Made by a program: the position numbers and the translations under genes
Notes under the pieces: generated by a model
What the model was told of the DNA's origin: nothing
What the model saw: only the letters and a program-made list of their open reading frames with translations
Databases searched by the model: none
Virus record (IMG/VR): IMGVR_UViG_3300008113_000003
Coordinates: 62,001 to 126,000 of that record
Direction: 5' to 3' (one strand)
Length of the DNA stretch: 64,000 nucleotides
Part shown: positions 2,201-56,742 of the stretch, piece after piece
How the letters are laid out: every line of letters starts with the position of its first letter
Position numbering within the stretch: position 1 is the stretch's first letter

Positions 2201-2602
2201 ATGACAAAAAAAGTAAAATTCACAGAAAGACAAATAAAAATGCTTGCGGAAGTAGAGGCTCTTAAATTGAAGAACCCTGTTAATGAGGGGATTGAAGATA
2301 TGTTAGGAAAACATCTAGGTGATGATGAAGATAAAAAAATTGAGTATCCTTCACAAGAAGATTTAGCTGGTATGGATCCAGAGACTGAAATGGGCGGTGA
2401 CGACTCGATTAAAGTTACTGATATGAAGGGCGCTTCAGAGTTATTAGGTTATTTAGATAAACTAGAAGAAGCAAAATCCATCTTAAGTAAAATTGCCGCA
2501 AAGGAAGAGGATGATAACATCAAGGGTAGAATTTACGCACATTACGAAAAAACACAAAAACTAATCTTTGAACTAATCAAAGAATTTGGAATTGTTCACT
2601 AA
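2201..2602 (+). CDS. acidic hypothetical protein with N-terminal KKVKFTERQI tag (putative head/internal protein)
   Basis: 133-aa ORF flanked by a TATTTAT motif and a terminator; its N-terminus resembles MKVKITESQL of 9461..9799. Confidence 0.75.
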   Translation: MTKKVKFTERQIKMLAEVEALKLKNPVNEGIEDMLGKHLGDDEDKKIEYPSQEDLAGMDPETEMGGDDSIKVTDMKGASELLGYLDKLEEAKSILSKIAAKEEDDNIKGRIYAHYEKTQKLIFELIKEFGIVH

Positions 2603-2608
2603 AAACTT

Positions 2609-2635
2609 AAGGCCCTCTTGACTGAGGGCTTTTTT
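2609..2635 (+). terminator. intrinsic terminator
   Basis: AAGGCCCTC-TTGACT-GAGGGCTTT hairpin with a T-run just after the stop at 2602. Confidence 0.8.
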
Positions 2636-2659
2636 GTTTATTTTAGCTGTATTTTCCCT

Positions 2660-2668
2660 ATATTTATA
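2660..2668 (+). promoter_or_regulatory. ATATTTATA putative late-promoter motif
   Basis: Ends 2 nt before the GTG start at 2671. Confidence 0.55.
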
Positions 2669-2670
2669 GG

Positions 2671-3309
2671 GTGTCTAAACCATATAAAATATTATTGTAT
2701 AACAACGGTAAACGTATTAAGGTTATCGATCAGATTGCCACATATAATGAATCCGTTAAAGTTTACAACCAGATATTGGAATCAAACGTTTGTTTCTTTC
2801 CAAAAGAATATGATTGGTTAGGTAGAGAAACTGATTATGAATTGGTTTTAATTGGCCCAAAGACGGGTACTTCAATAAATCACTTTAGAAATGAAATGGG
2901 TGCACTTGTTAAAGTTAAACCAAAGGGTGATTTTGTTATAAAAAAAATTAGTCCCTACCCCATCGAAGAGGTGTTTAAACATAAGAACACCGATCAAAAA
3001 CACACATTTAGAACTTTAGTTAAAAATTTCCTGGTAAATAATAATAACACAAGAGTTGTACTGTCTTTTAACAACAAACTTGTTATTGAGTACTTTGAAA
3101 ACGAGCAGCTTGACGTATTTGTTCTTAAAAACCAAGAAGACTCGTTAAGGTTAAATGAAACCATTAAAGTTTTTACCCAAACAAATGGGTTGACAAACTT
3201 TATATTTTTTAATGATCCAACAATTGATACGGTGAGAAGGGTTTATGATGCTTTAGAGGCTAATTACGGGATTTCCAGAGAATGGATGGCCAGAACATCA
3301 ACAAGATGA
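2671..3309 (+). CDS. hypothetical protein (212 aa, GTG start)
   Basis: Long + strand ORF that abuts the convergent gene at 3310. Confidence 0.75.
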   Translation: MSKPYKILLYNNGKRIKVIDQIATYNESVKVYNQILESNVCFFPKEYDWLGRETDYELVLIGPKTGTSINHFRNEMGALVKVKPKGDFVIKKISPYPIEEVFKHKNTDQKHTFRTLVKNFLVNNNNTRVVLSFNNKLVIEYFENEQLDVFVLKNQEDSLRLNETIKVFTQTNGLTNFIFFNDPTIDTVRRVYDALEANYGISREWMARTSTR

Positions 3310-3525
3310 TTAGCTTCTTTTAAAGATAAACCTGACATCATTTATTATGATCTCAAAAGTTCTTTTAGAAGTGTAACCGTGCACTGTTTTATTTATAAAT
3401 TTAAAAACTTCCTGTTGTAAAACTTCATGCTTACTTTCATTTAGTTTAATATAAACTTCAGTATTTTTGTTTTCACCACTACTTGTGATTGTTGTTGCGA
3501 TATTATTTATCTGCTCTAGTTTCAT
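3310..3525 (-). CDS. hypothetical protein (71 aa)
   Basis: ATGA overlap with the upstream ORF, consistent with translational coupling. Confidence 0.65.
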   Translation of the reverse strand: MKLEQINNIATTITSSGENKNTEVYIKLNESKHEVLQQEVFKFINKTVHGYTSKRTFEIIINDVRFIFKRS

Positions 3526-3728
3526 AAATATCTAAATACCTTTGAGATAAAATTTTTAAACCTAGCCCATTTAGATGGCTCCTTTTTAATATAGTTATCA
3601 AAATTATTGATTTCTTTACCCAAACCTTTTTTTACGGCATCGGCATAAGCTTTTTTAGCTTTCTCAATTTCAAATTTATCTTTATTTATCTCCTTTTCAA
3701 AAGTTTTATAAAGTCTATCGTCTTCCAT
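3522..3728 (-). CDS. hypothetical protein (68 aa, basic amphipathic C-terminus)
   Basis: Tightly packed in the operon; ends in KWARFKNFISKVFRYL. Confidence 0.65.
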   Translation of the reverse strand: MEDDRLYKTFEKEINKDKFEIEKAKKAYADAVKKGLGKEINNFDNYIKKEPSKWARFKNFISKVFRYL

Positions 3729-3729
3729 A

Positions 3730-4335
3730 TTATTTTTTTAAATAAATAGTAAAATCTTCGTTTTCTAAATAACCCTGTACTAATTTTGGTATTGCGATAT
3801 GCGATAATCGATTTACCATATTCTCTGGATTATATAGGTTTAAAGGTGATAACCCAGATCTTTCATCTAAGAAATTAAACGCCACGCCTTTATTACACAT
3901 ATTATAGGCCATCTCAATCTTTCTAATAACCTCATCCATACCCACAAACCAGGTAAATACGCCTGATCCAATTACATAGTCAAACTTTTCGTTTATCTTA
4001 TCAATGTCAGAACATATGAATTTTTTTGTCGGGTACAACTGATTAGCGTAAACGATATATTTGTGGTTAATATCGATACCTGTGTAATCTATATTATTAT
4101 GGTTGTTATTGGCTATGTAATCGTTTAAATGGCCCAACCCACAGCCATAATCAAGTAAAGATGAGTTATCTTCTATACCAATACCAAATAAGGTCTTAAA
4201 TCGCTTCCTTTGCGTTTCTTGGTCTGTCCAACCAACAGCCATTGGTGTTGTAATTGGGTAGTCTTCAAGGTACATATTGTACACGCCAATAATATCACTG
4301 CTCATCTGGTAACTTTGATTCAATATATAATTCAA
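3730..4335 (-). CDS. class I SAM-dependent methyltransferase (true start possibly 4305)
   Basis: Motif I LLDYGCGLG, YTGIDIN, FDYVIGSGVF and an N-terminal GW...Q..RF. Confidence 0.85.
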   Translation of the reverse strand: MNYILNQSYQMSSDIIGVYNMYLEDYPITTPMAVGWTDQETQRKRFKTLFGIGIEDNSSLLDYGCGLGHLNDYIANNNHNNIDYTGIDINHKYIVYANQLYPTKKFICSDIDKINEKFDYVIGSGVFTWFVGMDEVIRKIEMAYNMCNKGVAFNFLDERSGLSPLNLYNPENMVNRLSHIAIPKLVQGYLENEDFTIYLKK

Positions 4336-4639
4336 TTATGTTGATGTAATAAACGACACCCGATATAAATGCGGCATCAAAGATAGTAAAAATAATCTTT
4401 TGATACAAATCTAGGTTTGTTTTCCCGAAAAGAATTGCTGTCGGGGAAAAACCCAAAACGGGTACAACATATAAACCAACCCAAAAACCAAAACACATCA
4501 TGCAATGTAATAAAGAACCAAAAAATTTTGATCTGGTTTTTATTACTTCCCTGAATGGTTTAAATAGTTTACTTTGGACCACAATAGATGTGATTCCATA
4601 GCATATAAAAACAAAATATGTTAAGGTAATCCAATTCAT
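4295..4639 (-). CDS. DUF1360-like membrane protein
   Basis: Three hydrophobic segments and GSLLHCMMCFGFWVG, matching the G-x-L-L-x-C-x-x-C-x-G-x-W pattern. Confidence 0.6.
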   Translation of the reverse strand: MNWITLTYFVFICYGITSIVVQSKLFKPFREVIKTRSKFFGSLLHCMMCFGFWVGLYVVPVLGFSPTAILFGKTNLDLYQKIIFTIFDAAFISGVVYYINIIELYIESKLPDEQ

Positions 4640-4640
4640 A

Positions 4641-5102: not shown

Positions 5103-5114
5103 TATTTAATTTTT

Positions 5115-6321: not shown

Positions 6322-6328
6322 CTTCTAT

Positions 6329-6401: not shown

Positions 6402-9400
6402 TTACAATAATTTCTTCTTGCTAACGCTTTTCCAGAAAACATCGTTTTCATTGATTTGCTTAGCTTTTTTCTCTTCAGAAATAACCGCTTGGTCATAAGA
6501 AACCATTTTCATCATTTTTTGTATCTCTAATGAAACAACATCTTCGTTTACCTTTTTATCTTTTTTCTTTTTATTATCATCACCTGGCAATGCATCACTT
6601 CTTTCATATGAATCATCGTTGTTGATGTTAAGACCTTTAGATGTATAATCCATGTCTCTTACATCTCTTCTAGCTTTAACAGCTTGCATTAGTTTTTCAC
6701 CACCCTTAGAGTCGTAATCAACATTTGCCTCACCTTCTTTATCAGGTAAACCGTTTGCTTGCGCAACAATTCTATCTTTAAAGTCATCACCACTGTCATT
6801 AACATAATCAAGATCTAACATGCTATTTCTACCGTGTTGTTTAACATCGATACTATCTTCCCAATCACTGTTATTGTGTTTTTGGTTTTTTAAGTTATCA
6901 ACTTTTTGATCAACGGTTTTTTGAGTTTTTTCAGCAGCTTTGATCATTTCCTCAGCTTCTTTTTCATTTTTAGCGTTTTCAGAATCTACATTCTTACCTT
7001 TCTTGGCAACAAATTTAGCCAATTCAGCTTCCTCTAAAAAATCTTCGTCATCATTGTCAACGTCAAAATTACCCATTTTTTCAATGTTTTTCAAATCTTT
7101 CATTGATGGTTCTTTTTCATCAGAAAAATCATCATCTTCAGTATCTTTGTATTTGCTATCTTGTTTTTCACCATAAGCTCTAATGAACTCAGCTTTTTTC
7201 ATAGCTCTAGGTTGTAACTCGTCAACTGTATCCAAAGCATCGGTTAAATTATCATCCATAAGTAAACCTGTTTTTTCTAAGAAAGATCTTTTGGTTGGTG
7301 ATACTAATAGATTTAATATGCTATTATTAGAACCTTTTGCGAATAATCTATCGCAATACTCCAAATAACTTTCCTCAGGGGTTTTTTGTATGAAATTAAT
7401 AAAGTTATCAGCGTTAGCATCTCTACTTGATTCGAATTGACTAAAATACTGATTAAATTTATCTTTAATATCGTCTGTATTTAACCCTTTAGCTAATGTA
7501 GCCATAGATTTTTCGATCGAGTTCATGAAATTTGTAAAGTATTTCATTTCTCTTTCGTATTGATCGCTTACAGCAACCTCATCGTCTTCAACGTCAGCTT
7601 CATCATTATATTCCATAAGCTCATCAGCTGGGCCTTCTACACCGATAGGGCCGACTGGTGCCATGCTAACTGGAGCTGGTGTCATATCACCTTCTGGTGC
7701 ATTTTCACCTTCCATTTCATTCATCAAGAAATCAAATACATGACTTAAATTTTCTTTTGCAACAGCCATGTGATCAGCAGCCCAATCATGTCCACTATTT
7801 AAAATAGCTTCAATTTTACCGTGATCAAATTTCATTAAGACATCAGCTTGTCTTTTGATTTGCTCTAAATTAGAGAAGAACATGTATCTGCTACTATCCT
7901 CATCACCTTCCGATAAATCAAATTCGTTCATCCAACCACCTTCTTCTAAATCAGCACCATCTCTTTCACCTTTACCAAATTTCTTTTTAGCCTCATTCCA
8001 GTCTTCCATTGAAAGATCCCAACCGTCAACCGCTTTAGCAACGTGTTCTTTAGCTTCAGAATAAGAATGACCGTGCTCAACACAATGTTTCAACTGGTCA
8101 TAAATAGCAGGGTTAATTCCAGCAGCCTCATCAACTTCACCTTCGCCAAACATATCCATTCCCATACCTTCATCCTCTAACATAGCTTCCGCTGTGTTTT
8201 TAGCTTCTTCGATGGCTTCTTGGTAATCACCATTTTCTAAATATTCTTCAATAGTATCTAAACCATTTGCAAATGTGGCTGTATCAGCAAGATCAGATGT
8301 ACCCATACCTGGTAACATTCTACTAATAAACATGTTAACCAACTTAACACCTGTTTCTCTAGCACCAATTCTTTCAACACTTGCCTCAATTTTTGCGTAT
8401 TTGTTAGCAAAACCACTAGCTGGTTCTTCTTCCTCTAACGCATCATTTTCTTCGTAAACCATTTCCTCTGGATCTAAACCTCTTCTAAAAGCGTCTTCAT
8501 AAAGTTTTTCTTGGGATTCCATTTTACCACCCCAAAGTTCTGAAATATAGCTAGAAACTTCGTTTGCACAAGAAGAGCCTTCACTCATCATGCAAGATTT
8601 AACCATTTCCATGCATATTTCAGCATCTTCCATCATTGATTTACAATAGCCTTCATATGTCTCACCTTCATTTAATGTTTCAGGTAAAAACCCTTCTCTA
8701 ACTAAAGTTTCGTACATGCATTCTGCAAGTTGATTATTTTCCATAATACCGCCCATGCACTTTGATGCGAATTCGGGTGTTAATTGTATGTTTTCCATAG
8801 TATTTGTATTTTCTAAGTTTTTATTTTCTTCTGTATAATTTTCATCCAACAATTCGATGGATTCATTTAATTGTTCAATAACAGATTCATTGATATTTTC
8901 CATTTTAATCATATCAATTGTTTCTGATAAATATTTTTCTCTGATTAATTTTGCTATAAATTCTGGTGACTTACCAGTTTCTTCAGCAATATGAGAGCAA
9001 TACCCATAACACCCCTCGCACATTTCTTCTTTAGACTCACCGATAAGTTTGATGGGTTTATCTACAGCTCCTTGTGAGCAATATGGGAATGCAAGGCATT
9101 TAGGTTCGATGGCCACTAAATGACCACCATTGTAAGAAGGCTTTTGCTTTAAATCACCACCAAACCATTCTAATAAATCACCTTCGGTTACTAAATTACC
9201 TTCAGTGCTATATAAATGTTCTTTAACATAACCTTGTGGTGGTACAGCTATTCTACCCACACCAACACCATTTTTAACATTGGAATCTTTCCATGTGTTA
9301 AAAAGCCTACTGTTTAATTTTTTCTTTGATATTCTACCTAACGGACCGATAAACCCACCATATGTTGGGCTACCTGGGTCACCTAAAACAGAAGCGACAG

Positions 9401-9461
9401 AAGCTGATTCGTTAACCAACGTTTTTTCAACAATGTTTTTTAAAAAATCCTCTTTTTTCAT
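6402..9461 (-). CDS. large acidic modular protein (1019 aa), putative head-associated/internal protein
   Basis: Very rich in E, D and M; many L/I/V-x-E sites separate short modules (CLAFPYCSQG; YMFFSNLEQ...HDWAADH). Confidence 0.8.
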   Translation of the reverse strand: MKKEDFLKNIVEKTLVNESASVASVLGDPGSPTYGGFIGPLGRISKKKLNSRLFNTWKDSNVKNGVGVGRIAVPPQGYVKEHLYSTEGNLVTEGDLLEWFGGDLKQKPSYNGGHLVAIEPKCLAFPYCSQGAVDKPIKLIGESKEEMCEGCYGYCSHIAEETGKSPEFIAKLIREKYLSETIDMIKMENINESVIEQLNESIELLDENYTEENKNLENTNTMENIQLTPEFASKCMGGIMENNQLAECMYETLVREGFLPETLNEGETYEGYCKSMMEDAEICMEMVKSCMMSEGSSCANEVSSYISELWGGKMESQEKLYEDAFRRGLDPEEMVYEENDALEEEEPASGFANKYAKIEASVERIGARETGVKLVNMFISRMLPGMGTSDLADTATFANGLDTIEEYLENGDYQEAIEEAKNTAEAMLEDEGMGMDMFGEGEVDEAAGINPAIYDQLKHCVEHGHSYSEAKEHVAKAVDGWDLSMEDWNEAKKKFGKGERDGADLEEGGWMNEFDLSEGDEDSSRYMFFSNLEQIKRQADVLMKFDHGKIEAILNSGHDWAADHMAVAKENLSHVFDFLMNEMEGENAPEGDMTPAPVSMAPVGPIGVEGPADELMEYNDEADVEDDEVAVSDQYEREMKYFTNFMNSIEKSMATLAKGLNTDDIKDKFNQYFSQFESSRDANADNFINFIQKTPEESYLEYCDRLFAKGSNNSILNLLVSPTKRSFLEKTGLLMDDNLTDALDTVDELQPRAMKKAEFIRAYGEKQDSKYKDTEDDDFSDEKEPSMKDLKNIEKMGNFDVDNDDEDFLEEAELAKFVAKKGKNVDSENAKNEKEAEEMIKAAEKTQKTVDQKVDNLKNQKHNNSDWEDSIDVKQHGRNSMLDLDYVNDSGDDFKDRIVAQANGLPDKEGEANVDYDSKGGEKLMQAVKARRDVRDMDYTSKGLNINNDDSYERSDALPGDDNKKKKDKKVNEDVVSLEIQKMMKMVSYDQAVISEEKKAKQINENDVFWKSVSKKKLL

Positions 9462-9799
9462 TAATTAGGTGAATTTTTAAGGTCACTTACCCAGAAACTT
9501 CTTCTGGTCCATAACTGTTTATATAGCTGAACCAACACATTTCTCGTTATTTCAACCACTTTATTTTCAAAATCTTTATTACTTTTAACGGTATCTTTTA
9601 CGATATCTTTTACCTTAGTTTCAAACTGAGAGCCACGTGTAATGTTTAAGAAATCCTTTATTTCATTCTTAATCAAAACTTTAATGTCGCTCTTATCCGT
9701 TGGGGTAAGGGCTTCATTTATTGGTGTTTTATCATCCATTTCAACCAAACATTCTTTCAAATACTGGTCTAATTGGCTTTCGGTTATTTTAACTTTCAT
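9461..9799 (-). CDS. hypothetical protein with MKVKITESQL tag (putative head protein)
   Basis: TAATG-coupled to the 1019-aa gene and preceded by TATTTATA. Confidence 0.75.
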   Translation of the reverse strand: MKVKITESQLDQYLKECLVEMDDKTPINEALTPTDKSDIKVLIKNEIKDFLNITRGSQFETKVKDIVKDTVKSNKDFENKVVEITRNVLVQLYKQLWTRRSFWVSDLKNSPN

Positions 9800-9814: not shown

Positions 9815-9822
9815 TATAAATA
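9815..9822 (-). promoter_or_regulatory. TATTTATA putative late-promoter motif
   Basis: GACTATTTATA ends 15 nt upstream of the ATG at 9799. Confidence 0.6.
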
Positions 9823-9840: not shown

Positions 9841-10248
9841 TTACAATAAAAGTAGTAATGTCAGTATAAAAATACCCCCACTTGTTATGTAGGAAATATT
9901 TCTTTGTTTCTTAAAAACTTTTATATTATGGTTTAAGTCCGAAATATGCTCGTCTTTTGTCTCAATAACTTTGTTTTTGTTTGTTATAATTGTATCTTTT
10001 TCTAAGATAATATGTTTTTGGTCTATTATAATACTATCCTTTTGAACCGACTGTTTAGTTATTAAATTAAGGCTATCTCTTGTAACCCCTATCTCAGCTT
10101 TTAATAACTGGTGATCCTTTTTAAGGATCAATGCGTTTCTTATTGCCGTGCAAGGTACGCAGCAGGTTGAATCACTTAAATTCGTCTGCGAAAGAGCTGG
10201 AGAGCTCACTGCTAGACATAGCATTAATACGATTAATATCTTTTTCAT
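9841..10248 (-). CDS. exported coiled-coil protein with signal peptide and C-terminal TM (spanin-like candidate)
   Basis: MKKILIVLMLCLAVSSPALS signal, CCVPC, a coiled coil and a hydrophobic C-terminus; overlaps the upstream gene by 77 nt. Confidence 0.6.
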   Translation of the reverse strand: MKKILIVLMLCLAVSSPALSQTNLSDSTCCVPCTAIRNALILKKDHQLLKAEIGVTRDSLNLITKQSVQKDSIIIDQKHIILEKDTIITNKNKVIETKDEHISDLNHNIKVFKKQRNISYITSGGIFILTLLLLL

Positions 10249-10510
10249 GTGCCTTTTTTTCCTTATTTAGTTTATTTTTTAAACCAGCCAACTCAATACC
10301 GTAAGCCGCTATCTTAGCATTCCTACTTTCAACAGATTTACTTAAAGAATCTATTTTTAAATCACTTTTTGTTATCGCTAAGTTTAATGAGTCTATTGTT
10401 TTTTGATAATGGCTAGTATCAATAACACCACTATCTTTCTTAAAAACGCTCATGTAAATTAGGAAACCAATACCAGCAAAAAGAATTAAAAAGATTATAT
10501 TTTTTTTCAT
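10172..10510 (-). CDS. N-terminal TM plus periplasmic coiled-coil protein (i-spanin-like candidate)
   Basis: Single N-terminal TM followed by a heptad coiled coil; located near the amidase gene. Confidence 0.6.
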   Translation of the reverse strand: MKKNIIFLILFAGIGFLIYMSVFKKDSGVIDTSHYQKTIDSLNLAITKSDLKIDSLSKSVESRNAKIAAYGIELAGLKNKLNKEKKAHEKDINRINAMSSSELSSSFADEFK

Positions 10511-11070
10511 TATAATGGGTTTTGTGATTGTTTGTTTTGTGTGATCTTAATTAAATTATTTCTACCAATTTGTACATCATTATATGACCTACCAATTGTA
10601 TTTAATAAATTTAGCAAATCTTGGTTTAAAATCAAGGTTCCACCAATTAAATTAATCTTAGGGTCTTCATCATTTGTATCAACCACAATTTCTTTAACCC
10701 CATCCAAAGCTGGGTTTTTAACAACGTCAGCTGTTAAAATAACACGGCCATTTTCTAATCTAATATTAACATAAGGTAACATCAAACCAGTGGCATTGAT
10801 AAAATCGCCAATGGCTTTTGTAAACTCAGCTTTACTTTCATCAGATAACTGAACGTCATCGGCTTTACTTAGATAACCAACAGTGTTAATATTGTCAAAA
10901 GTCAACTCCTCACCATCTTTTGATTCAACCTCAACAGGTTCTGTTCTAACCATTTCATCATTTTCGTTTAATAACGATTTAGTTTTTTTAACCGATTCCT
11001 GTAATTGAACCGTTCTCACTTTGTTTAGTAATGATTTAATATCATCGTAGCTTTTATCGTAATTGTTCAT
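10510..11070 (-). CDS. hypothetical protein (186 aa) with N-terminal IKSLLNKVR...LLNE tag
   Basis: ORF coupled to neighbours on both sides. Confidence 0.75.
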   Translation of the reverse strand: MNNYDKSYDDIKSLLNKVRTVQLQESVKKTKSLLNENDEMVRTEPVEVESKDGEELTFDNINTVGYLSKADDVQLSDESKAEFTKAIGDFINATGLMLPYVNIRLENGRVILTADVVKNPALDGVKEIVVDTNDEDPKINLIGGTLILNQDLLNLLNTIGRSYNDVQIGRNNLIKITQNKQSQNPL

Positions 11071-11680
11071 GTTTGTATTCCTTATTTATTAGTTCATTTA
11101 TTTTCTTAAAATCAGCCGCTGGTGATAAATCGTAGTTGTTTTTTGTGTAGTTACTTCTATTCAGTATACCCTTTTGCGTATTTGGTTTATTTATAACAAT
11201 ATTATTTCCTATAAAATCTTTTATTATGCCGTATTCTATACATAAATAGTCTATTAATTCCGCAAGTTTCGTGTACTGTTCTTCGGAATAAGTAGCCCAA
11301 TGTCTTTTATTTCTCCAGGGTATTTCAACAACATCACCAAAATACTCAGAACCTTTCCAGGTAAAGTATTTATCCAAAGCAAGATCTTTACTTAACCACC
11401 CAACATTTTCTAAACAAATTGTTATTGAGTTTTTTTCTATTTGTTGCTCCCACATCAATAAACTATAATACTTGGGATCAAAATGTTGGTAAACCTCACC
11501 ATTTTGTGAAATAAAAAAACACGGTAATCGGTTGTATTTACCGTTGTACCGTGTTTTAATTTTTGTCAAGTACTCATCCATGGTACATGACGTATGTGTA
11601 AGAATTATTTGCTTCTTTTTAGTTTTGTTTTTCTGTATGTTCTCATTACCCTCAAAGTAATACTCTTTATTGACTATCAT
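11054..11680 (-). CDS. Amidase_2 (N-acetylmuramoyl-L-alanine amidase) fold protein with apparently degenerate Zn ligands
   Basis: QIILTHT, FFISQNGEVYQ, NSITICLEN, YSEEQY..LAELIDYLC..YGI and DLSP follow the Amidase_2 layout. Confidence 0.75.
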   Translation of the reverse strand: MIVNKEYYFEGNENIQKNKTKKKQIILTHTSCTMDEYLTKIKTRYNGKYNRLPCFFISQNGEVYQHFDPKYYSLLMWEQQIEKNSITICLENVGWLSKDLALDKYFTWKGSEYFGDVVEIPWRNKRHWATYSEEQYTKLAELIDYLCIEYGIIKDFIGNNIVINKPNTQKGILNRSNYTKNNYDLSPAADFKKINELINKEYKHEQLR

Positions 11681-12476
11681 CTTTTGTGAAAACCATAATA
11701 TTTTCTATTCCGTTATTCTTAATTTCATTAGTTTTATCGTAAACAGGATAGTTCTCTAAATCGCTTTCAGTTGTTTTTTCTTCAATAACGGGCTCTTCAA
11801 TTTCATTTTGTATATCAATTAAAGAATCCTCTTCAAAATCGTTATTATCTTCAACCACGTATTCTTCTCTATATTGTGAGTTAGCCAAAGCTGTTGGTTC
11901 GTCAGCTAAATCTTCCTCAGTGATTTTAGGCAACTTACCTTCTTTACGTAATTCATCAACTTTTTCCCAAACTTTTTTTGCTTCCTCATTTAAATTTGGT
12001 TGCGTTACAGCATCATTTACAGCATCATTTACAGCATTATCTGGTCTAATATAATCCACTAATGATTTAATGAAACCTAAAGCGACTAGTGGTAAAATAG
12101 CACCACTGACAATAGATAATATTCTTTTTTGTTCAATCGGATCACTATCAACTAGGCCGAATAATTCAACCCAGGATTGGTAATCATTTAAGTGGGTATA
12201 AGCAAAAAAAGCGTTACCCATGGCCTGCATTGCTGTTAAAATAAAGAACAAGACCCATACAATACCCTTGTTCATTTTTTTAAGCGCTATGATTGAGGCT
12301 AAAGAAGCCGCAGCACCAACCTCAAAGGCTAACGCTAATGTAACGGCTAACCATTTAGGGTTTGATAATTCAAAGAAATCAATTACGTGTATTGTTGAAA
12401 TCAACGATACCATCACATATAATGTGACAAATGTACCTATAATAAAATTTCTTGTTAATTTATTTTCTGTTTGCAT
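11667..12476 (-). CDS. four-TM membrane protein with acidic C-terminal tail
   Basis: Four hydrophobic helices in the first ~140 aa, then a low-complexity acidic region. Confidence 0.75.
   Translation of the reverse strand: MQTENKLTRNFIIGTFVTLYVMVSLISTIHVIDFFELSNPKWLAVTLALAFEVGAAASLASIIALKKMNKGIVWVLFFILTAMQAMGNAFFAYTHLNDYQSWVELFGLVDSDPIEQKRILSIVSGAILPLVALGFIKSLVDYIRPDNAVNDAVNDAVTQPNLNEEAKKVWEKVDELRKEGKLPKITEEDLADEPTALANSQYREEYVVEDNNDFEEDSLIDIQNEIEEPVIEEKTTESDLENYPVYDKTNEIKNNGIENIMVFTKDDSQ
12005..12040. repeat. 12-bp tandem repeat x3 (TTACAGCATCAT) encoding NAVNDAVNDAV
   Basis: Read directly; in frame, with one mismatch in the third copy. Confidence 0.85.
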
Positions 12477-12478
12477 AA

Positions 12479-12655
12479 TTACTTGTTTTTAGCTGCTTCT
12501 TTTTTAGCAATAGCTATTGCAGCTTGTTGTGGGTATTTAGACTTTATTTCTTGAACCATTTTTAGTTCATTTTCATTTAAATTTGATTCATCGATCTGAG
12601 ATATTCTTTCATCAGCCTGGGCAATCAAACTATTTAATTTCTGTAACGAATCCAT
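12479..12655 (-). CDS. small protein (58 aa) with QQAAIAIAKK motif, missed by the ORF track
   Basis: ATG at 12655 to TAA at 12479 gives MDSLQKLNSLIAQADERISQIDESNLNENELKMVQEIKSKYPQQAAIAIAKKEAAKNK, exactly filling the gap between two genes. Confidence 0.7.
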   Translation of the reverse strand: MDSLQKLNSLIAQADERISQIDESNLNENELKMVQEIKSKYPQQAAIAIAKKEAAKNK

Positions 12656-12656: not shown

Positions 12657-14195
12657 TTATAAAATTGTTTTTTTAAATTCTGTTATAATATTTTTGATAT
12701 TACTTAAAGCTTCATTTATTTCTTCCGTAGCATCTGGCTCATTAACATTGGGTGCGTATGTTTCAATTTGCTTGATGATAAACATAGAAACGTCTCTAAT
12801 TAATTTTTGGTGTTTTCTAACGCCATCTTTGTTAGTTTTGTACATGGCTAAATAATTAATAGAGTGTTCGATTGGGAAATCGTAACTTTTCATTACGGTA
12901 TAAGCAACTGATTCCGCTTGTAACTCCCTCTCCTGATGACTACCGCCTCTACCAACATAAAAACCTAATTTACTATTTGCTTCATGGTGTAACAGCTCAT
13001 GTGCTAATTCATGAACAAACGTTGATAGTAAATCAGCACCAAGGCTGTTGGTTAACAATTCAATGTGTCCGCCTTTACTAACACCTCTAGCACCGCCTAA
13101 ATTAGATGAGTCTGTTATCTTAATACCACTAGCTTGTGAAAACTCTTTTAGAGCTTTAATCATGATAGCCGACTTTTCATCCTCAGTATCCTCATCACTA
13201 AACCATTTTGGCCCTTCTGGGGTGTTTATTTGTTCTCTACCTGGTATTGGTTGTACATTTTTATTGTCATAGATGGCAACCTCAGTAAAATCTTTGGCAG
13301 CGCTAACTTTAAAATACCCCTTCTTTTTTGCCCAAACCCAAAATGCGTTATATTTTTCTTTTGGTATTGGCATTTTTTTATTGGGGAGTAGTTTAATACC
13401 ACTTTCTTTAGCGTATTCTTCAGCCGATTTTGGGTAATTTGCAATAATTTTATAAACGTTTCCAGCTAAGCTACCACTATTTGTTTTTTTACTGATCATG
13501 ATTTTTTTGGCGTTTTCTACTGGCTCATAACCTCTACCAAACCAATATGGTATTGATCCAAACTCTTTCGCCCCTTTAGTTGCTTGCAACCATATCATAA
13601 ACATATTAAAAAAGCTATATGAATATTCACCTGTTTCAAGAATGTAAGACTTAGACGCTTTATTAAACTCAGCGATATCATCCAAGAGTTTTTTATCATC
13701 CAAACTTTCACCTAACTCACTAATATATGCATCTAAAATATCTAATGTGACTCTACTAGATTTAGTTTTAACCGTCTCATAAGCATCTTTTATATTTTCT
13801 AAAAAATCTTTTGTTTTTGTAAGTTGCTCAATGTCACTATAAACACCAATTTCTTTATGACCACTAATATCATGACCAAGTTTTTCATTCGCAGCTTTTA
13901 CCGCATCATTCGCTATCTTAGCAATCTCATCCGCTGACTTAAATCTGTCATTCCAAAACCACTGTTTTCCTTTGAGATCCCAAGAGGCACCATATTTTTT
14001 CATGACATCCTTAACAGCAAAAGTTTCATCGCTAGCCTTTTTTGGGTCTGGGTTATCAGAAACAACAACGATTCTTTTTTGGTTAAAATCATCGATTTTA
14101 CTTTTTACCGTAATTTGTTCGTCAGTCGGTTGTAAAGCTTTAATTAGAGTTAAAGCTTCCATGATTGGTGATTTAGTGTATTTAAGTGTTAGCAT
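12657..14195 (-). CDS. ArdC-like protein: DUF5710-like motif, ArdC-N ssDNA-binding domain and zincin metallopeptidase
   Basis: VKDVMKKYGASWD..KQW; YSYSFFNMFMIWLQ (ArdC-N YSxxN...Q); FVHELAHELLH...ELQAESVAY...SINYL (ImmA/IrrE/MPTase-type HExxH). Confidence 0.75.
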   Translation of the reverse strand: MLTLKYTKSPIMEALTLIKALQPTDEQITVKSKIDDFNQKRIVVVSDNPDPKKASDETFAVKDVMKKYGASWDLKGKQWFWNDRFKSADEIAKIANDAVKAANEKLGHDISGHKEIGVYSDIEQLTKTKDFLENIKDAYETVKTKSSRVTLDILDAYISELGESLDDKKLLDDIAEFNKASKSYILETGEYSYSFFNMFMIWLQATKGAKEFGSIPYWFGRGYEPVENAKKIMISKKTNSGSLAGNVYKIIANYPKSAEEYAKESGIKLLPNKKMPIPKEKYNAFWVWAKKKGYFKVSAAKDFTEVAIYDNKNVQPIPGREQINTPEGPKWFSDEDTEDEKSAIMIKALKEFSQASGIKITDSSNLGGARGVSKGGHIELLTNSLGADLLSTFVHELAHELLHHEANSKLGFYVGRGGSHQERELQAESVAYTVMKSYDFPIEHSINYLAMYKTNKDGVRKHQKLIRDVSMFIIKQIETYAPNVNEPDATEEINEALSNIKNIITEFKKTIL

Positions 14196-14496: not shown

Positions 14497-14505
14497 TATA
14501 AATAT
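14497..14505 (-). promoter_or_regulatory. ATATTTATA putative late-promoter motif
   Basis: Ends 3 nt before the ATG at 14493 and heads the 14493-to-9841 operon. Confidence 0.6.
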
Positions 14506-54341: not shown

Positions 54342-54358
54342 GGAATATTTAATATTTT

Positions 54359-54413: not shown

Positions 54414-54425
54414 AAGCTTTATTTT

Positions 54426-55382
54426 TTAGAATGGTAAATCGTCAATCTTTAGTTGAGCGTTTGGTACCTCTTCAGTCGCTGACCCTTCCGTCATAGACGA
54501 ATCATCATCAGCATCTTCTTCAGACATAGCAACTGGTGCTGGTGTCTCGTATTTAGTTTTAGGGGCTGGTGTTGCGGTTCCAGTGTATGTGCTTACACCA
54601 TCCTCAACTTTGGCGATAAAACATTTTTGTTCGGCATCCCAAATTGGTTCGCTACCTTCAGCAACGATGTTTAAATATTCAATAGATTTTTTCTTGAAGA
54701 CATCAGTCCACGCCATTGGATCGCTTAACCACTCAACTGATTGGTTTTCGTCCTCAGACAATTTAGACTCTCTATCAGGGATGATAGATGCAACTTTAGT
54801 AAAACCAACTTTGCTATCTTTTGATTTATCTCTAATCATAGAGATTGTAAGATCGAAACCTTCAAATGGGTTCCAGAATGCACCGTATTTTTTAACAAGT
54901 GGTGCAATTTTGTCCATGATACCTGAACCGTCTTGTACTGCTGGAAATCTCCAGAATTTTACACCTTCATGTTCTTTACCACGTTCGATAACACGAACAA
55001 TGAAGAACTGGCGTGATTTGTAATTGATGGCCAATTTCTTGTCTTCTTTGTCTGCACTCTTCATTAAGAATTTGTACATCTCATTCAACGGAGAATCTTC
55101 ACCATCTTGTGATGGGTCATAAAGTTTTGTCCATCTTTTACCAATTTTTAGGTTGTGGAAATAACCAACTTTGTACCATTTAGTTGGGTCATCTTGGTTA
55201 GGAAGAATCCTAACTGATTTTTCACCACTTTGTGCACCTTCATCAAGTGCAATTGTGAAATACTTTGTTAAGTCGACAGAACTAGATTGGGTAGTCTGTG
55301 TTGTTTTCGACTTTGCTTTTTCGTAGTCGGCCAGAGTGTCTGTTGCGGCCTTGGACCAATCGATTTTCTTGTAGTCAATCAT
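54426..55382 (-). CDS. single-stranded DNA-binding protein (T4 gp32-like)
   Basis: VRILP, YFH, VIERGKEHEGVKFWRF, GFDLTI and an acidic tail ending DDLPF. Confidence 0.85.
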   Translation of the reverse strand: MIDYKKIDWSKAATDTLADYEKAKSKTTQTTQSSSVDLTKYFTIALDEGAQSGEKSVRILPNQDDPTKWYKVGYFHNLKIGKRWTKLYDPSQDGEDSPLNEMYKFLMKSADKEDKKLAINYKSRQFFIVRVIERGKEHEGVKFWRFPAVQDGSGIMDKIAPLVKKYGAFWNPFEGFDLTISMIRDKSKDSKVGFTKVASIIPDRESKLSEDENQSVEWLSDPMAWTDVFKKKSIEYLNIVAEGSEPIWDAEQKCFIAKVEDGVSTYTGTATPAPKTKYETPAPVAMSEEDADDDSSMTEGSATEEVPNAQLKIDDLPF

Positions 55383-55403
55383 AATTATATAAATTTTATG
55401 CTA

Positions 55404-55435
55404 CAAAAGTAAGAACAAAAACCACAAAAAACAAG
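55404..55435 (-). promoter_or_regulatory. Bacteroidota-type promoter CTTG-N20-TACTTTTG heading the replication operon
   Basis: TACTTTTG at 55411-55404, 20-nt spacer, CTTG at 55435-55432. Confidence 0.7.
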
Positions 55436-55460
55436 TTTCTGGGGAAATATTTTTAAAAAT

Positions 55461-55766
55461 TTAGAAAATCGACTTGTACTTCTTAACCCCAAATACCAAT
55501 AAACCTCTGTAAACGCTTGTTGTTTCGTTTTGACTAGCGTTAACAGCTGTAACCTCTATAGATTGTATTGGCATTTCTAACATGCCCATCATTGAGAACG
55601 TTATGTCTTCAACACCGTTAATGGTTGTAACTACGGTATCATTTGTATTACCCAATGTTATAAAACCGTAATACTCTATTGTATAATCAGTTTCATTTAC
55701 AAAACCAATTGCTGGGTCACCAACAGTTAATTTTTGCGTAATTAATTCTTGTTGTATATGTCTCAT
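55461..55766 (-). CDS. hypothetical beta-rich protein (101 aa), possibly a virion component
   Basis: Last gene of a TATTTAT-headed three-gene unit. Confidence 0.7.
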   Translation of the reverse strand: MRHIQQELITQKLTVGDPAIGFVNETDYTIEYYGFITLGNTNDTVVTTINGVEDITFSMMGMLEMPIQSIEVTAVNASQNETTSVYRGLLVFGVKKYKSIF

Positions 55767-55768
55767 TA

Positions 55769-56518
55769 TTAATAATTGCTTACAGGTTTTTCGTTATTAT
55801 TTGCGTTGTAAAAACTATTTCTAATGTCAGTTTCGTTGTAGTTATTCATAAGACTGTCCATCATAGATAGTTTGTCTGGTCTATTTTCAAGATCAGTTTG
55901 TGTTTTTGGTGCGTTTCCACCCATATACTCATCTTGAGTAACACTAAAAGGGTAAGAATCTTTAGCCAAAGCTTTTCTTCTTTCCTCTTCGGTTGGCGGT
56001 CTCATCAATTCAACTTGTTTTGTTAAAGCATTCATTTGTTGAATAACTGAGTCCATTTTTTGTAAACCTTGCTCAACACCATTAACTTTAGCAATGATGG
56101 ATTCGATTTTGTTACTAGCATCCGCAATTTTTTGGATAATGTTGTCTGTTTTACCAGACAAATCTTTACTAGTATTAACTAAATCAGTAACATCAATTTC
56201 GGTATCACCCTCAACTGGAGCCTCTGGAGCCACCTCTGGGGTAGCTGTGGTATCAACACCAGGATCTGCACCTAATTCAGCATCTGGAACGGCAGTATCC
56301 ACACCAGGATCTGTAGCAGGTGCCTCAGCACCTAATTCAGCATCTGGAACGGCAGTATCCACACCAGGATCTTCGGCTGGAACTTCTTCAGCTGGGGCAT
56401 CTTCCTCAGCTTCATAAAACTTATAATGATGACCCTCACCCAATTTTTCTTGGTAGGCCATAATACTATTAAATCTTTTTACCTCTTCGGATAATACTTT
56501 ATCTAATTTTTTGTTCAT
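55769..56518 (-). CDS. acidic P/A-rich coiled-coil protein with LSEEVKRFNSIM tag (scaffold/internal head protein candidate)
   Basis: Terminal tag, acidic repeats, TEIDVTDLV, coiled coil and DSYPF. Confidence 0.75.
   Translation of the reverse strand: MNKKLDKVLSEEVKRFNSIMAYQEKLGEGHHYKFYEAEEDAPAEEVPAEDPGVDTAVPDAELGAEAPATDPGVDTAVPDAELGADPGVDTTATPEVAPEAPVEGDTEIDVTDLVNTSKDLSGKTDNIIQKIADASNKIESIIAKVNGVEQGLQKMDSVIQQMNALTKQVELMRPPTEEERRKALAKDSYPFSVTQDEYMGGNAPKTQTDLENRPDKLSMMDSLMNNYNETDIRNSFYNANNNEKPVSNY
56268..56372. repeat. 45-bp exact direct repeat (period 60) encoding DPGVDTAVPDAELGA x2, plus a partial third copy
   Basis: Copies at 56268-56312 and 56328-56372; a partial DPGVDT copy lies at about 56249-56267. 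Confidence 0.9.
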
Positions 56519-56742
56519 CTTAAATATGTTTTACGACTGTGACTTATTGGTGATTCTTCTCTTAGTAATTCTCTACCATCTTCCATCATTAATTTCTTTT
56601 CAATCAATGTTCTTTCAATTAAACCGTCTTTTGTTTTTACATAACAAACCCCAGTTTTTATATCACAAACTTCTTCACCGATTTGTGCTTCTTCAATTTT
56701 TTTACCCAAAAATTGGTCTAATTTACTATTAAAATTGCTCAT
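56515..56742 (-). CDS. hypothetical protein (75 aa) with CDIKTGVC motif
   Basis: ATGA-coupled; VCDIKTGVCY...DGLIER...EDGRELL. Confidence 0.7.
   Translation of the reverse strand: MSNFNSKLDQFLGKKIEEAQIGEEVCDIKTGVCYVKTKDGLIERTLIEKKLMMEDGRELLREESPISHSRKTYLR

What the first reader, a model, noticed from the sequence alone, without database searches (positions are those of the whole stretch)
2201..56742. Unrelated proteins share [ILV]-x-E-rich terminal tags: possible capsid-targeting and prohead-protease processing code
Seen: KKVKFTERQIKMLAE (2201) resembles MKVKITESQLDQYLKE (9799). VLSEEVKRFNSIMAY (N-terminus, 56518) resembles VSLEIQKMMKMVSY (C-terminus of the 1019-aa protein) and EEINEALSNIKNII (C-terminus of the ArdC-like protein). 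Also IKSLLNKVR...LQES...LLNE (11070) and IDESNLNEN (12655). All lie in TATTTAT-headed units. Known: the T4 gp21 prohead protease cleaves after (I/L)-x-E, and T4 internal proteins carry a cleavable capsid-targeting peptide. Inference: a portable amphipathic tag recruits diverse cargo into the prohead and is then cleaved at x-x-E.
Basis: partly seen in the sequence, partly recalled or inferred. Interest (0 to 1): 0.66.

Follow-up and report, generated by a model that had tools for sequence, protein, structure and literature searches.

The report
Shared N-terminal address tags on phage proteins
In this uncultured T4-like jumbo phage and its relatives, otherwise unrelated proteins begin with the same ~20-residue peptide ending in Ile/Leu/Val-Asn-Glu, the motif at which its major capsid protein is predicted to be cut. 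These peptides are therefore probably removable labels that load proteins into the phage head, but nothing has been tested at the bench.

Summary
One is about 30 residues before a C-terminus, not at it.

**Supported.** The first resemblance (2201 vs 9799) belongs to a real, recurrent N-terminal module, roughly MKKxx[IL]TE[SN][QE]Lxx[IL][IV]K[RK]V[IL]NE.
- An HMM built only from an independent relative's tags finds the 9799 protein at E=3e-4. The 2201 protein is borderline.
- The same tag heads about 45 unrelated protein families in viral metagenomes and at least 11 proteins in one complete relative.
- Outside the window the genome encodes a T4 gp21-type prohead protease, a gp23-type capsid protein and an acidic scaffold.
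- The capsid protein's L-N-E|S aligns with the known T4 cleavage site and is invariant across the clade.
- [ILV]NE is enriched 2.4-fold only in the first 45 residues of proteins. This is absent from a control phage.
- Distant homologues of the 112-aa protein start exactly after the Glu.
- Tagged genes share an oriented TATTTAT upstream motif with structural genes.

**Not supported.** The second resemblance (56518, 1019-aa C-end, ArdC-like C-end), any C-terminal tag, and marked amphipathicity.

**Verdict.** This is a plausible T4-CTS-like propeptide system, a new variant of a known kind. Packaging and cleavage remain inferred.

The parts
9461..9799 (-). 112-aa protein. Residues 1-29 (nt 9713-9799), MKVKITESQLDQYLKECLVEMDDKTPINE, are the type-1 N-terminal tag plus a linker ending in I-N-E. 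The conserved core starts at ALTPTDKSDIK.
   Evidence: The independent-genome tag HMM gives E=2.9e-4 at residues 1-11. Glu29 is invariant in 25 orthologues. Distant 79-82-aa homologues start M-ALT..., exactly after the Glu.
2201..2602 (+). 133-aa acidic protein. Residues 1-29 (nt 2201-2287), MTKKVKFTERQIKMLAEVEALKLKNPVNE, are a divergent type-1-like tag followed by an acidic linker.
   Evidence: Tag HMM rank 3, E=0.23, aligned at residues 3-16. The tag K-x-[IF]-T-[EQ]-[KR]-Q-I is kept in 12 orthologues, but V-N-E is not. A sense TATTTAT lies 48 nt upstream.
6402..9461 (-). 1019-aa multi-domain acidic protein.
- The N-terminal 18 residues, MKKEDFLKNIVEKTLVNE (nt 9408-9461), precede the conserved SASVASVLGDPGSP domain.
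- Residues 520-588 (nt 7698-7904) are a domain that in other phages is a stand-alone tagged protein.
- The motif VSLEIQKMMKMVSY (nt 6495-6536) lies 30 aa before the C-terminus.
   Evidence: Orthologues keep [ILV]-N-E before the conserved domain although the leader length varies. Residues 520-588 are 57% identical (E=8e-26) to residues 21-89 of the tagged 164-aa proteins in L274/L276. It has the third-highest [ILV]xE density in the genome, after the scaffold and a head-core-like protein.
10510..11070 (-). 186-aa protein with N-terminal YDDIKSLLNKVR...LQE|S...LLNE|N.
   Evidence: Orthologues keep YD[DQ]I[KR]x[LM]L and a following [IL]-x-E. The profile search does not link it to other families.
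12479..12655 (-). 58-aa ORF holding IDESNLNE|N.
   Evidence: Found by six-frame search. It is conserved in L027/L028.
12657..14195 (-). 512-aa ArdC-like protein with an HExxH metalloprotease motif at residue 395. It has a short N-terminal leader, MLTLKYTKSPIME|ALTL (nt 14157-14195). The C-terminal helix EEINEALSNIKNII is at nt 12684-12725.
   Evidence: Orthologues read MLxFKHxxxx[VI]NE|ALTL. HExxH is kept in all 14 orthologues. Atlas look-alikes carry ArdcN/M78 at score 0.94. The three best PDB fold matches are ArdC of plasmid R388 (E 7e-4, low TM). There is no Pfam hit.
55769..56518 (-). 249-aa protein. The leader, residues 1-28 (nt 56435-56518), is MNKKLDKVLSEEVKRFNSIMAYQEKLGE. It is followed by GHHYKFYEAEE, an acidic Pro-rich repeat and a coiled coil.
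   Evidence: In 13 distinct orthologue N-termini the tripeptide before GHHYKFY is L-x-E, with x = G, S, Y, N or T. The resemblance to the 1019-aa C-end is not statistically supported.
56515..56742 (-). 75-aa ORF that heads the unit containing the 249-aa gene.
   Evidence: A sense TATTTAT lies 15 nt upstream, at 56758-56764.
9816..9822 (-). TATTTAT promoter-like element 16 nt upstream of the 112-aa gene. Sister copies are at 2146-2152 (+), 14498-14504 (-) and 56758-56764 (-).
   Evidence: Genome-wide there are 42 sense vs 20 antisense copies within 70 nt upstream of ORF starts (P=0.004), and 19 of 42 lie 10-19 nt from the ATG. The same motif heads the sheath, tube, gp25-like, protease and scaffold genes.
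11054..11680 (-). 208-aa N-acetylmuramoyl-L-alanine amidase lying inside the cluster of tagged genes. It is context only and is not tagged.
   Evidence: PF01510, E=3.7e-9.

Best explanation
The window belongs to a 206-kb genome of an uncultured jumbo phage with T4-type head morphogenesis. A subset of its proteins carries a short N-terminal propeptide: a helix of about 13-29 residues that ends in [Ile/Leu/Val]-Asn-Glu.

In the window the candidates are the 112-aa, 1019-aa and 512-aa (ArdC-like) proteins, and probably the 133-, 186-, 58- and 249-aa proteins. Elsewhere in the genome they are a ferritin-like 202-aa protein and 252-, 255-, 259- and 1135-aa proteins.

The best-defined form is the type-1 tag, consensus MKKxx[IL]TE[SN][QE]Lxx[IL][IV]K[RK]V[IL]NE.

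The proposed mechanism follows the capsid-targeting sequences of T4 internal proteins. The genes are transcribed with the structural genes from TATTTAT-type promoters. The propeptide docks the protein onto the scaffolding core of the assembling prohead. The gp21-like serine protease then cuts after the Glu, at the same [IL]-N-E motif where it is predicted to cut the major capsid protein. The mature cargo stays in the head and is probably ejected with the DNA.

**Shown here:**
- the tag is recurrent and portable;
- [ILV]NE has an N-terminal-only excess;
- the protease, capsid and scaffold genes are present;
- the capsid site aligns with the T4-type site;
- tag-less homologues start at the Glu boundary.

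**Inferred:** docking, cleavage, packaging and ejection.
For: 1. **T4-type head module in the same genome.** Gp23 capsid PF07068, E=2e-74. Prohead protease PF03420 at 63 bits (cut-off 27), 30% identical to phage Moon gp21, with the ELDHP and GISSRG motifs kept. A 440-aa acidic scaffold has the highest [ILV]xE density in the genome.
2. **Capsid site.** HMLNE|SVALG aligns with DFLTE|AEIGG of a T4-like gp23, the known maturation site. [LI]-N-E|[SA] is invariant in about 50 distinct orthologues and is followed by a variable stretch. Protease orthologues keep [IL]xE sites at both ends.
3. **N-terminal [ILV]NE excess.** In the first 45 residues it occurs 21 times vs 8.8±3.0 (0/2000 shuffles). The control [ILV]EN is not significant. 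The internal ratio is 1.11 and the C-terminal ratio 1.26. A complete 257-kb relative replicates this ([ILV][NS]E 49 vs 26, P<0.001). It is absent from AT-rich phage K (6 vs 8.1).
4. **Boundary.** Distant homologues of the 112-aa protein begin M-ALT..., exactly after I-N-E.
5. **Portability.**
   - A DNA pattern for only the first 11 residues recovered 76 unique proteins in 45 downstream families, with the unconstrained remainder converging on ...[IL][IV]K[RK]V[IL]NE.
   - At least 11 such proteins occur in one genome.
   - One domain occurs either tagged and alone or embedded in the 1019-aa protein after L-S-E.
   - Conservation is at the protein level: 38% of identical-residue codon pairs differ.
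6. **Independent HMM.** It finds the 252-aa (E=2e-6) and 112-aa (E=3e-4) N-termini.
7. **Co-occurrence.** The S77 protease is present in 8 of 10 tag-bearing contigs. The two without it are only 30-37% complete.
8. **Shared promoter-like motif.** All four type-1 genes have a sense TATTTAT, as do the sheath, tube, baseplate, protease and scaffold genes. The association with N-terminal [ILV]NE has odds ratio 2.9, P=0.03.
9. **Precedent.** T4 internal proteins are diverse proteins sharing only a 10-20-residue CTS that gp21 removes (PMC3012670, PMC5694885).
10. **Replication enzymes.** Those in the window carry no type-1 tag.
Against: - There is no virion proteomics, N-terminal sequencing or expression data, and the phage is uncultured.
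- HMMs trained on one family's tag do not find other families above decoys.
- The 2201 and 255-aa tags are only borderline with the independent HMM.
- A crude test of conserved [ILVM]xE per window gives 10/37 N-terminal vs 38/216 internal windows. This is not a clear excess.
- The V-N-E of the 2201 protein is not conserved in its orthologues.
- Tag-less homologues of the 112-aa protein show that the core protein does not need the tag.
- The T-E-x-Q helix N-cap also occurs at the start of ordinary HTH repressors picked up by the pattern scan.
- TATTTAT also precedes some non-structural genes, and it has not been shown to be late-specific.
- The tagged genes lie among lysis, regulatory and replication genes, not in the head module.
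- ORF starts were taken as the first ATG, so some N-termini may be mis-set.
- No background rate of the S77 protease among large viral contigs was measured.
Confidence: 0.55

Rival explanations
1. The tag is a docking or interaction peptide for some other hub, and [ILV]-N-E is merely the preferred helix end. Candidate hubs are the phage's two ClpP homologues with the AAA ATPase of the head module (a degron), an oligomerisation helix, or a host factor. The proteins would be neither packaged nor cut by the prohead protease.
For: - Two ClpP-family proteins (PF00574) and an AAA ATPase are encoded in the genome.
- The tagged genes sit outside the head module.
- Tag-less homologues of the 112-aa protein exist.
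- The protease-tag co-fold gave no support (this is not evidence either way).
Against: - This does not explain why the tag ends in the tripeptide that marks the capsid protein's predicted maturation site.
- It does not explain why [ILV]NE is enriched only N-terminally.
- It does not explain the exact boundary in tag-less homologues.
- It does not explain the sharing of a promoter-like motif with structural genes.
Confidence: 0.25
2. There is no common function. The similarities are ordinary N-terminal helices with a Thr/Ser-x-x-Glu capping box and Lys-rich starts, seen by eye in an AT-rich, Lys/Glu/Asn/Ile-rich proteome.
For: - Cross-family HMM searches are at decoy level.
- [ILV]xE occurs 1.6 times per 100 residues.
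- The pattern scan also hit cI-like repressors.
- Amphipathicity is not above shuffles.
- TATTTAT is not over-represented in the window.
Against: - The independent-genome HMM finds the 252- and 112-aa N-termini at E=2e-6 and 3e-4.
- The unconstrained second half of the tag is conserved across 45 families.
- At least 11 near-identical tags occur in one genome, with synonymous divergence.
- The N-terminal [ILV]NE excess survives local-composition shuffles and is absent from phage K.
Confidence: 0.12
3. The conserved gene starts are DNA-level recombination cassettes: promoter plus first codons, like the mobile regulatory cassettes of T4-type phages. They would mediate gene shuffling, and the peptide would be a by-product.
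For: A conserved promoter-like TATTTAT sits just upstream of many tagged genes, both here and in the relative G002.
Against: - 38% of codon pairs encoding the same residue differ between tags of one genome.
- The upstream spacers are not alike.
- Selection therefore acts on the peptide.
Confidence: 0.05

Closest known systems
Capsid targeting sequence (CTS) of phage T4 internal proteins IPI/IPII/IPIII and Alt, removed by the gp21 prohead protease
   Same: - A short N-terminal peptide is shared by otherwise unrelated proteins.
- It ends in [Ile/Leu]-x-Glu.
- The genome has gp21-family protease, gp23-family capsid and acidic scaffold genes.
- The cargo includes a likely anti-restriction protein, as T4 IPI* is (PMC3012670, PMC5694885).
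   Different: - The tag here is about 20 residues, against about 10 for the T4 IPs (from memory: MKTYQEFIAE), and has a different sequence.
- P2 is predominantly Asn.
- Many copies occur per genome (at least 11 in the relative G002), and an acidic Pro-rich linker often follows.
- Function is inferred only.
Propeptides of phiKZ-like giant phages (phiKZ gp175, 201phi2-1, SPN3US gp245 substrates)
   Same: A gp21-family protease trims the N-terminal propeptides of many head and ejection proteins after Glu. Paralogues share conserved N-termini. The protease autoprocesses its C-terminus (PMC5694885).
   Different: Those propeptides are mostly longer than 100 residues, and the motif there is [S/A/G]-x-E. 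Here the leaders are short and T4-like, with a hydrophobic residue at P3.
Encapsulin cargo-loading peptides
   Same: A short portable peptide addresses diverse enzymes, including ferritin-like proteins, to the interior of an HK97-fold shell.
   Different: Encapsulin peptides are usually C-terminal, are not cleaved, and bind the shell protein directly. Here the peptide is N-terminal and, by analogy with T4, would bind a scaffold core and be removed.
ArdC anti-restriction protein of plasmid R388 (for the 512-aa protein)
   Same: It has an HExxH metalloprotease motif. The three best structural matches in the PDB are ArdC, and the Atlas look-alikes carry ArdcN/M78.
   Different: There is no Pfam ArdcN match. 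TM-scores are low (0.17-0.36). The protein is about twice as long, with an N-terminal leader ending [VI]-N-E in orthologues.

Membership tests
T4-type CTS / gp21-processed head proteins | The genome encodes a gp21-family (Peptidase S77, PF03420) prohead protease with its catalytic His and Ser. | tested here: met
   PF03420 at 63.1 bits (cut-off 27), genome 189139-189852. It is 30% identical to phage Moon gp21, with ELDHP and GISSRG aligned.
T4-type CTS / gp21-processed head proteins | A Gp23-family major capsid protein with an N-terminal propeptide cut at [IL]-x-E. | tested here: inconclusive
   PF07068, E=1.7e-74. L-N-E|S aligns with L-T-E|A of a T4-like gp23 and is invariant in orthologues. 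Cleavage itself has not been observed.
T4-type CTS / gp21-processed head proteins | A short N-terminal peptide shared by proteins that are otherwise unrelated. | tested here: met
   45 downstream families carry the tag. 11 proteins in G002 have no BLAST similarity beyond the tag to this genome's proteins. No paralogy was detected among the tagged proteins of this genome.
T4-type CTS / gp21-processed head proteins | The peptide ends in a hydrophobic-x-Glu site. | tested here: met
   Glu29 is invariant in the 112-aa family. L-x-E is invariant in the 249-aa family. [IL]-N/x-E sits at about residue 21 of most tags.
T4-type CTS / gp21-processed head proteins | Mature proteins are present in virions with a neo-N-terminus after Glu. 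| not testable with these tools
   The phage is uncultured and no proteomic data are on hand.
T4-type CTS / gp21-processed head proteins | The tag is sufficient to load a foreign protein into proheads. | not testable with these tools
   This needs a genetic system.
T4-type CTS / gp21-processed head proteins | Sequence similarity to the T4 CTS itself. | not tested
   The T4 CTS is known to me only from memory, and no T4 IP sequence was fetched. The consensus here looks different and longer.
ArdC (512-aa protein) | An ArdcN ssDNA-binding domain plus an HExxH metalloprotease domain. | tested here: inconclusive
   HExxH is conserved. The top PDB folds are ArdC at E 7e-4 but with TM 0.17-0.36. Atlas score is 0.94. 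Pfam shows no ArdcN at E<=0.01.
Ferritin-like (202-aa protein, outside the window) | Pfam Ferritin domain above the gathering score. | tested here: met
   PF00210 at 53.7 bits (cut-off 24.5), residues 86-196.

The most novel reading that the evidence does not exclude
A ~21-residue N-terminal address label, MKKxx[IL]TE[SN][QE]Lxx[IL][IV]K[RK]V[IL]NE, cleaved after the final Glu, defines the packaged and ejected proteome of a widespread, uncultured clade of T4-related jumbo phages. The set of proteins each phage injects could then be read directly from sequence. That set would include an ArdC-like anti-restriction enzyme, a ferritin-like protein and dozens of unknown small proteins. The label could also be reused to load cargo into capsids.
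Probability: 0.4. Interest if true: 0.75.

Novelty: new variant of a known kind. Interest (0 to 1): 0.6.

Why it matters
Proteins that phages package and inject with their DNA are among the first weapons deployed against host defences. T4 IPI* and P1 Dar are examples. Such proteins are normally found only by virion proteomics of cultured phages.

If the tag described here is a cleavable capsid-targeting peptide, it gives a sequence-only way to list the injected proteins of a large group of uncultured freshwater and marine T4-like jumbo phages. That list would contain dozens of unknown families, a likely anti-restriction enzyme and a ferritin-like protein. The tag would also be a second natural cargo-loading peptide for capsid engineering, and it would extend the T4 CTS principle well beyond the T-even phages.

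Tried and rejected
- **Co-fold of protease and tag.** The gp21-like protease was folded with residues 1-50 of the 112-aa protein. The result was no verdict (score 0.00, controls not run). It is not evidence either way.
- **HMMs from one family's tag searched against the proteome.**
  - Type 1 (112-aa and 133-aa families): other families appear at E 0.6-3, the same as decoys.
  - Type 2 (249-aa, 1019-aa C-end and 186-aa families): no cross-detection. The type-2 and C-terminal resemblance was therefore dropped.
- **Word search with residues 1-40 of the 252-aa protein.** It found one candidate, its own cluster. The tool cannot find tag-only relatives.
- **Pfam, PHROGs and PDB sequence searches of the tagged proteins.** Nothing useful was found except the amidase.
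- **tblastn against cultured phages.** The 624-aa protein and a 634-aa ORF gave no match.
- **Conserved [ILVM]xE per alignment window.** 10/37 N-terminal vs 38/216 internal windows, which is not decisive.
- **Helical hydrophobic moment of the window's tags.** It is not above shuffles. Only the canonical G002 tag reaches P=0.04.
- **Full-text search for LTESDL, LTESEL and LTESQL.** No relevant paper was found.
- **Not used.** The large representative-protein search and the read-mapping tools were not used. No alternative genetic code was needed.

Full report
**1. What the window is**

The window is bases 62001-126000 of a single 206,296-bp virus record with 32% G+C. Almost all genes in the window lie on the minus strand. 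The window contains:
- a baseplate/tail block: gp6-like and gp25-like wedge proteins, and giant 2672-aa and 910-aa ORFs;
- a replication and nucleotide block: both RNR subunits, DnaB-like helicase, 5'-3' exonuclease, gp32-like SSB, primase and a PD-(D/E)XK nuclease;
- a sigma factor;
- an amidase;
- many ORFs with no known family.

The head module lies outside the window:
- portal;
- a 237-aa coiled-coil protein;
- an AAA ATPase;
- a 237-aa Peptidase_S77 (T4 gp21-type) prohead protease;
- a 440-aa acidic scaffold-like protein;
- a 527-aa Gp23-family major capsid protein.

The capsid protein is 26-32% identical to those of cultured T4-like phages and 43% identical to that of an uncultured 484-kb phage. 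The phage is therefore an uncultured, distant member of the T4 superfamily.

**2. The observation**

All quoted peptides are present. Exact positions are given in the observation check. One correction is needed: VSLEIQKMMKMVSY lies 30 residues before the C-terminus of the 1019-aa protein, not at it. IDESNLNEN belongs to a 58-aa ORF (12479-12655, minus strand) that is below the usual ORF-length cut-off.

**3. Is the resemblance real?**

I separated two motif classes.

*Type 1* is MK.K[ILF]TE.Q[IL].... It sits at the N-terminus of the 133-aa (2201) and 112-aa (9799) proteins. Outside the window it sits at the N-terminus of a 252-aa and a 255-aa protein.

Within this genome alone the similarity is weak. 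HMMs trained on the orthologues of one family find the other families only at E 0.6-3, the level of reversed-sequence decoys.

Independent data change the picture:
These are 76 unique proteins in 45 families as judged by residues 25 to the end.
- The unconstrained continuation converges on ..[IL][IV]K[RK][VI][IL]NE or a close [ILV]-x-E at about residue 21.
- One complete 257-kb relative (G002) has at least 11 such proteins, for example MKKIVKLTESDLVRIVKRVINE.
- An HMM built only from those 11 tags, whose downstream parts have no BLAST match in this genome, finds four N-termini in this genome. The best decoy scores E=0.3.

| Protein | E-value | Rank |
|---|---|---|
| 252-aa | 1.7e-6 | 1 |
| 112-aa (window 9799) | 2.9e-4 | 2 |
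| 133-aa (window 2201) | 0.23 | 3 |
| 255-aa | 0.4 | 5 |

- The tags are conserved as peptides, not as DNA. 38% of codon pairs that encode the same residue differ.

The 9799 protein is a clear member and the 2201 protein a probable divergent one.

*Type 2* is ..EE[IV].[KR][FM]..[IM]... It covers the 249-aa N-terminus, the 1019-aa C-terminal region and the 512-aa C-terminus. It is conserved within each orthologous family. Profiles do not connect the families above decoys. Only one clear extra example turned up in G002. I treat this resemblance as unproven.

**4.

Nearly all the leaders end in [ILV]-N-E:
- PINE|ALT in the 112-aa protein;
- PVNE|G in the 133-aa protein;
- LVNE|SAS in the 1019-aa protein;
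- LVNE|G in the 255-aa protein;
- VINE|E in the 259-aa protein;
- SLNE|A in the 202-aa ferritin-like protein;
- LLNE|N in the 186-aa protein;
- NLNE|N in the 58-aa protein.

The statistics, using shuffles of residues 2-45 that keep local composition:

| Test | Observed | Expected | Result |
|---|---|---|---|
| [ILV]NE, first 45 residues, this genome | 21 | 8.8±3.0 | 0 of 2000 shuffles reach it |
| [ILV]EN (permuted control), same region | 14 | 8.8 | P=0.06 |
| [ILV]NE, internal blocks | 44 | 39.6 | ratio 1.11, not significant |
| [ILV]NE, last 45 residues | 12 | 9.5 | ratio 1.26, not significant |
| [ILV][NS]E, first 45 residues, G002 | 49 | 26.4 | P<0.001 |
| [ILV]NE, first 45 residues, G002 | 23 | 14.5 | P=0.024 |
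| [ILV]NE, first 45 residues, phage K (30% G+C, different head protease) | 6 | 8.1 | not significant; no type-1 tags |

About a dozen proteins per genome therefore carry a non-random N-terminal [ILV]NE. C-terminal tags get no support.

**5. Link to the prohead protease**

- The capsid protein's HMLNE|SVALG aligns with DFLTE|AEIGG of a T4-like gp23. That is the established gp23 maturation site after residue 65 (the T4 site is textbook knowledge, and the 65-residue propeptide is cited in PMC5694885).
- In about 50 distinct orthologues the tripeptide [LI]-N-E followed by [SA] is invariant, while the next 5-8 residues vary.
- The protease keeps the gp21 His and Ser motifs.
- Its orthologues keep [IL]xE sites before the catalytic domain and about 28 residues from the C-terminus. 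This recalls the autoprocessing described for this protease family (PMC5694885).
- The three proteins richest in [ILV]xE are the scaffold, the 237-aa protein next to the portal, and the window's 1019-aa protein.

**6. Comparative anatomy of the tagged families**

- *112-aa family* (48 loci). Near relatives keep MK[VI]K[IV]T[ED]SQL...[ILV][NST]E|ALT, and Glu29 is invariant. Distant homologues of 79-82 aa start M-ALT..DK, exactly at the residue after the Glu. The leader is thus a separable add-on whose boundary is the putative cut.
- *1019-aa family.* The leader varies from 6 to about 25 residues but always ends [ILV]-[ND]-E before the conserved domain. In some phages that N-terminal domain is a separate protein of 160-196 aa. 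Residues 520-588 are 57% identical (E=8e-26) to a domain that in L274/L276 directly follows a canonical type-1 tag. In the 1019-aa protein that domain follows L-S-E.
- *512-aa family.* Orthologues read MLxFKHxxxx[VI]NE|ALTL.
- *249-aa family.* L-x-E before GHHYKFY has P3 and P1 invariant and P2 free.
- *133-aa family.* This is a counter-example. Its V-N-E is not conserved.
- A blunt alignment-window test did not show a clear N-terminal excess of conserved sites: 10/37 N-terminal vs 38/216 internal windows.

**7. Co-regulation and co-occurrence**

TATTTAT is not over-represented as a word: 47 copies in the window against 51 expected. It is, however, oriented and positioned.
- There are 42 sense vs 20 antisense copies within 70 nt upstream of ORF starts (P=0.004).
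- 19 of the 42 lie 10-19 nt from the ATG, and the consensus is (G/A)A-TATTTAT-(A/T).
- It heads the sheath, tube, gp25-like, fibre, protease and scaffold genes.
- It also heads all four type-1 genes and the 202-, 259- and 1135-aa genes.
- Its association with N-terminal [ILV]NE has odds ratio 2.9, P=0.03.
- The same motif precedes tagged genes in G002.

It looks like the structural-gene (late) promoter, but its timing is inferred.

PF03420 is present in 8 of 10 tag-bearing contigs. The two without it are only 30-37% complete. No background rate was measured.

**8. What the cargo is**

- The 512-aa protein has a conserved HExxH motif. Its Atlas look-alikes carry ArdcN/M78 at score 0.94. Its three best PDB fold matches are ArdC of plasmid R388, at E 7e-4 with probability about 1 but low TM. 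A packaged anti-restriction protein would parallel T4 IPI* (PMC3012670).
- The 202-aa tagged protein outside the window is ferritin-like.
- Several tagged proteins share the same layout: tag, then an acidic Pro-rich linker, then a globular domain.
- The other tagged proteins have no known family.
- The replication enzymes of the window have no type-1 tag. Only the DnaB-like helicase has an [ILV]NE near its start.

**9. Interpretation**

The best-supported reading is a T4-CTS-like system. Short N-terminal propeptides on diverse proteins are made together with the structural proteins. They are addressed to the prohead core and removed by the gp21-like protease after [ILV]-N-E.

The sequence statistics, the gene content, the alignment to the T4 site, the boundary in homologues and the portability are all shown here. 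Docking, cleavage, packaging and ejection are inferred by analogy (PMC3012670, PMC5694885). I put this reading at 0.55.

The main rival, at 0.25, is a different binding partner for the tag. Chance (0.12) remains the best reading for the type-2 and C-terminal resemblances. A DNA-level cassette (0.05) is disfavoured by the synonymous divergence.

**10. Novelty**

The principle is known from T4 and from phiKZ-like phages. I found no description of this tag: its sequence, its length of about 20 residues, its Asn at P2, its multiplicity per genome, or its spread across uncultured T4-related jumbo phages. A full-text search for the motif found nothing relevant. I class it as a new variant of a known kind.

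**11. Limits**

- ORFs were called as the longest ATG-started frames, so some N-termini may be wrong.
- The regular expressions for type 1 were derived from the data. For that reason I rely on the independent-genome HMM, the unconstrained part of the pattern hits, and the shuffle tests.
- No experiment or proteome was available.
- The read tools, the large representative search and alternative genetic codes were not used.

Noticed in passing
genome 10474-11082 (-), outside the window (L001:10474-11082): A 202-aa ferritin-like protein (PF00210, residues 86-196) has an N-terminal leader ending SLNE|A, an acidic Pro-rich linker and a TATTTAT 15 nt upstream. A phage ferritin apparently addressed like the other tagged proteins is reminiscent of encapsulin ferritin cargo.
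   Followed up: partly
window 12657-14195 (-): The 512-aa protein has a conserved HExxH motif, and ArdC of plasmid R388 gives its three best PDB fold matches. It is a candidate packaged anti-restriction metalloprotease.
   Followed up: partly
window 6402-9461 (-): The 1019-aa protein looks like a fusion of modules that are separate genes elsewhere. Its N-terminal Cys-rich domain of about 180 aa stands alone in L025-L032. Residues 520-588 stand alone, tagged, in L274/L276. It has the third-highest [ILV]xE density in the genome, which suggests polyprotein-like processing.
   Followed up: partly
window 2201-2602, 55769-56518; genome 10474-11082, 35002-35769: Four tagged proteins share the same layout: leader, then an acidic Pro/Asp/Glu-rich low-complexity linker, then a globular domain. 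In the 249-aa protein the linker contains a DPGVDTAVPDAELGA repeat.
   Followed up: no
window 56820-63989 (-) and 28893-36911 (-): There are two giant ORFs. The 2389-aa one has an M23-type peptidase/endolysin-like domain at residues ~2068-2200. The 2672-aa one has no PHROG family at all and sits in the baseplate/tail block.
   Followed up: no
genome 29283-29867 (-) and 59335-60003 (-), outside the window: The genome has two ClpP-family proteins (PF00574; E 2e-23 and 1e-78) in addition to the gp21-type prohead protease. An AAA ATPase lies inside the head module (188165-189088). Their roles are unknown.
   Followed up: no
window 2-1366 (-): A 455-aa protein with DUF2828 and DUF7788 domains is highly conserved in relatives (up to 97% identity).
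   Followed up: no
window 9841-12476 (-): A lysis-like cluster is interleaved with the tagged genes. It holds a signal-peptide protein (9841-10248), a membrane protein (10172-10510), an amidase (11054-11680) and a multi-pass membrane protein (11667-12476). It is unclear whether the amidase is an endolysin or a virion enzyme.
   Followed up: no
genome ~39300-43500, outside the window: A stretch with only short, odd ORFs rich in Cys, Pro and Arg. It is probably non-coding RNA or tRNA genes rather than proteins. It was not scanned.
   Followed up: no
L305-L317 (G002, 257-kb relative): The relative shows the same ATATTTAT element 25-35 nt upstream of tagged genes. Two tagged genes are adjacent (116717-117085 and 117095-117466), which suggests local duplication or shuffling of tagged cassettes.
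   Followed up: partly
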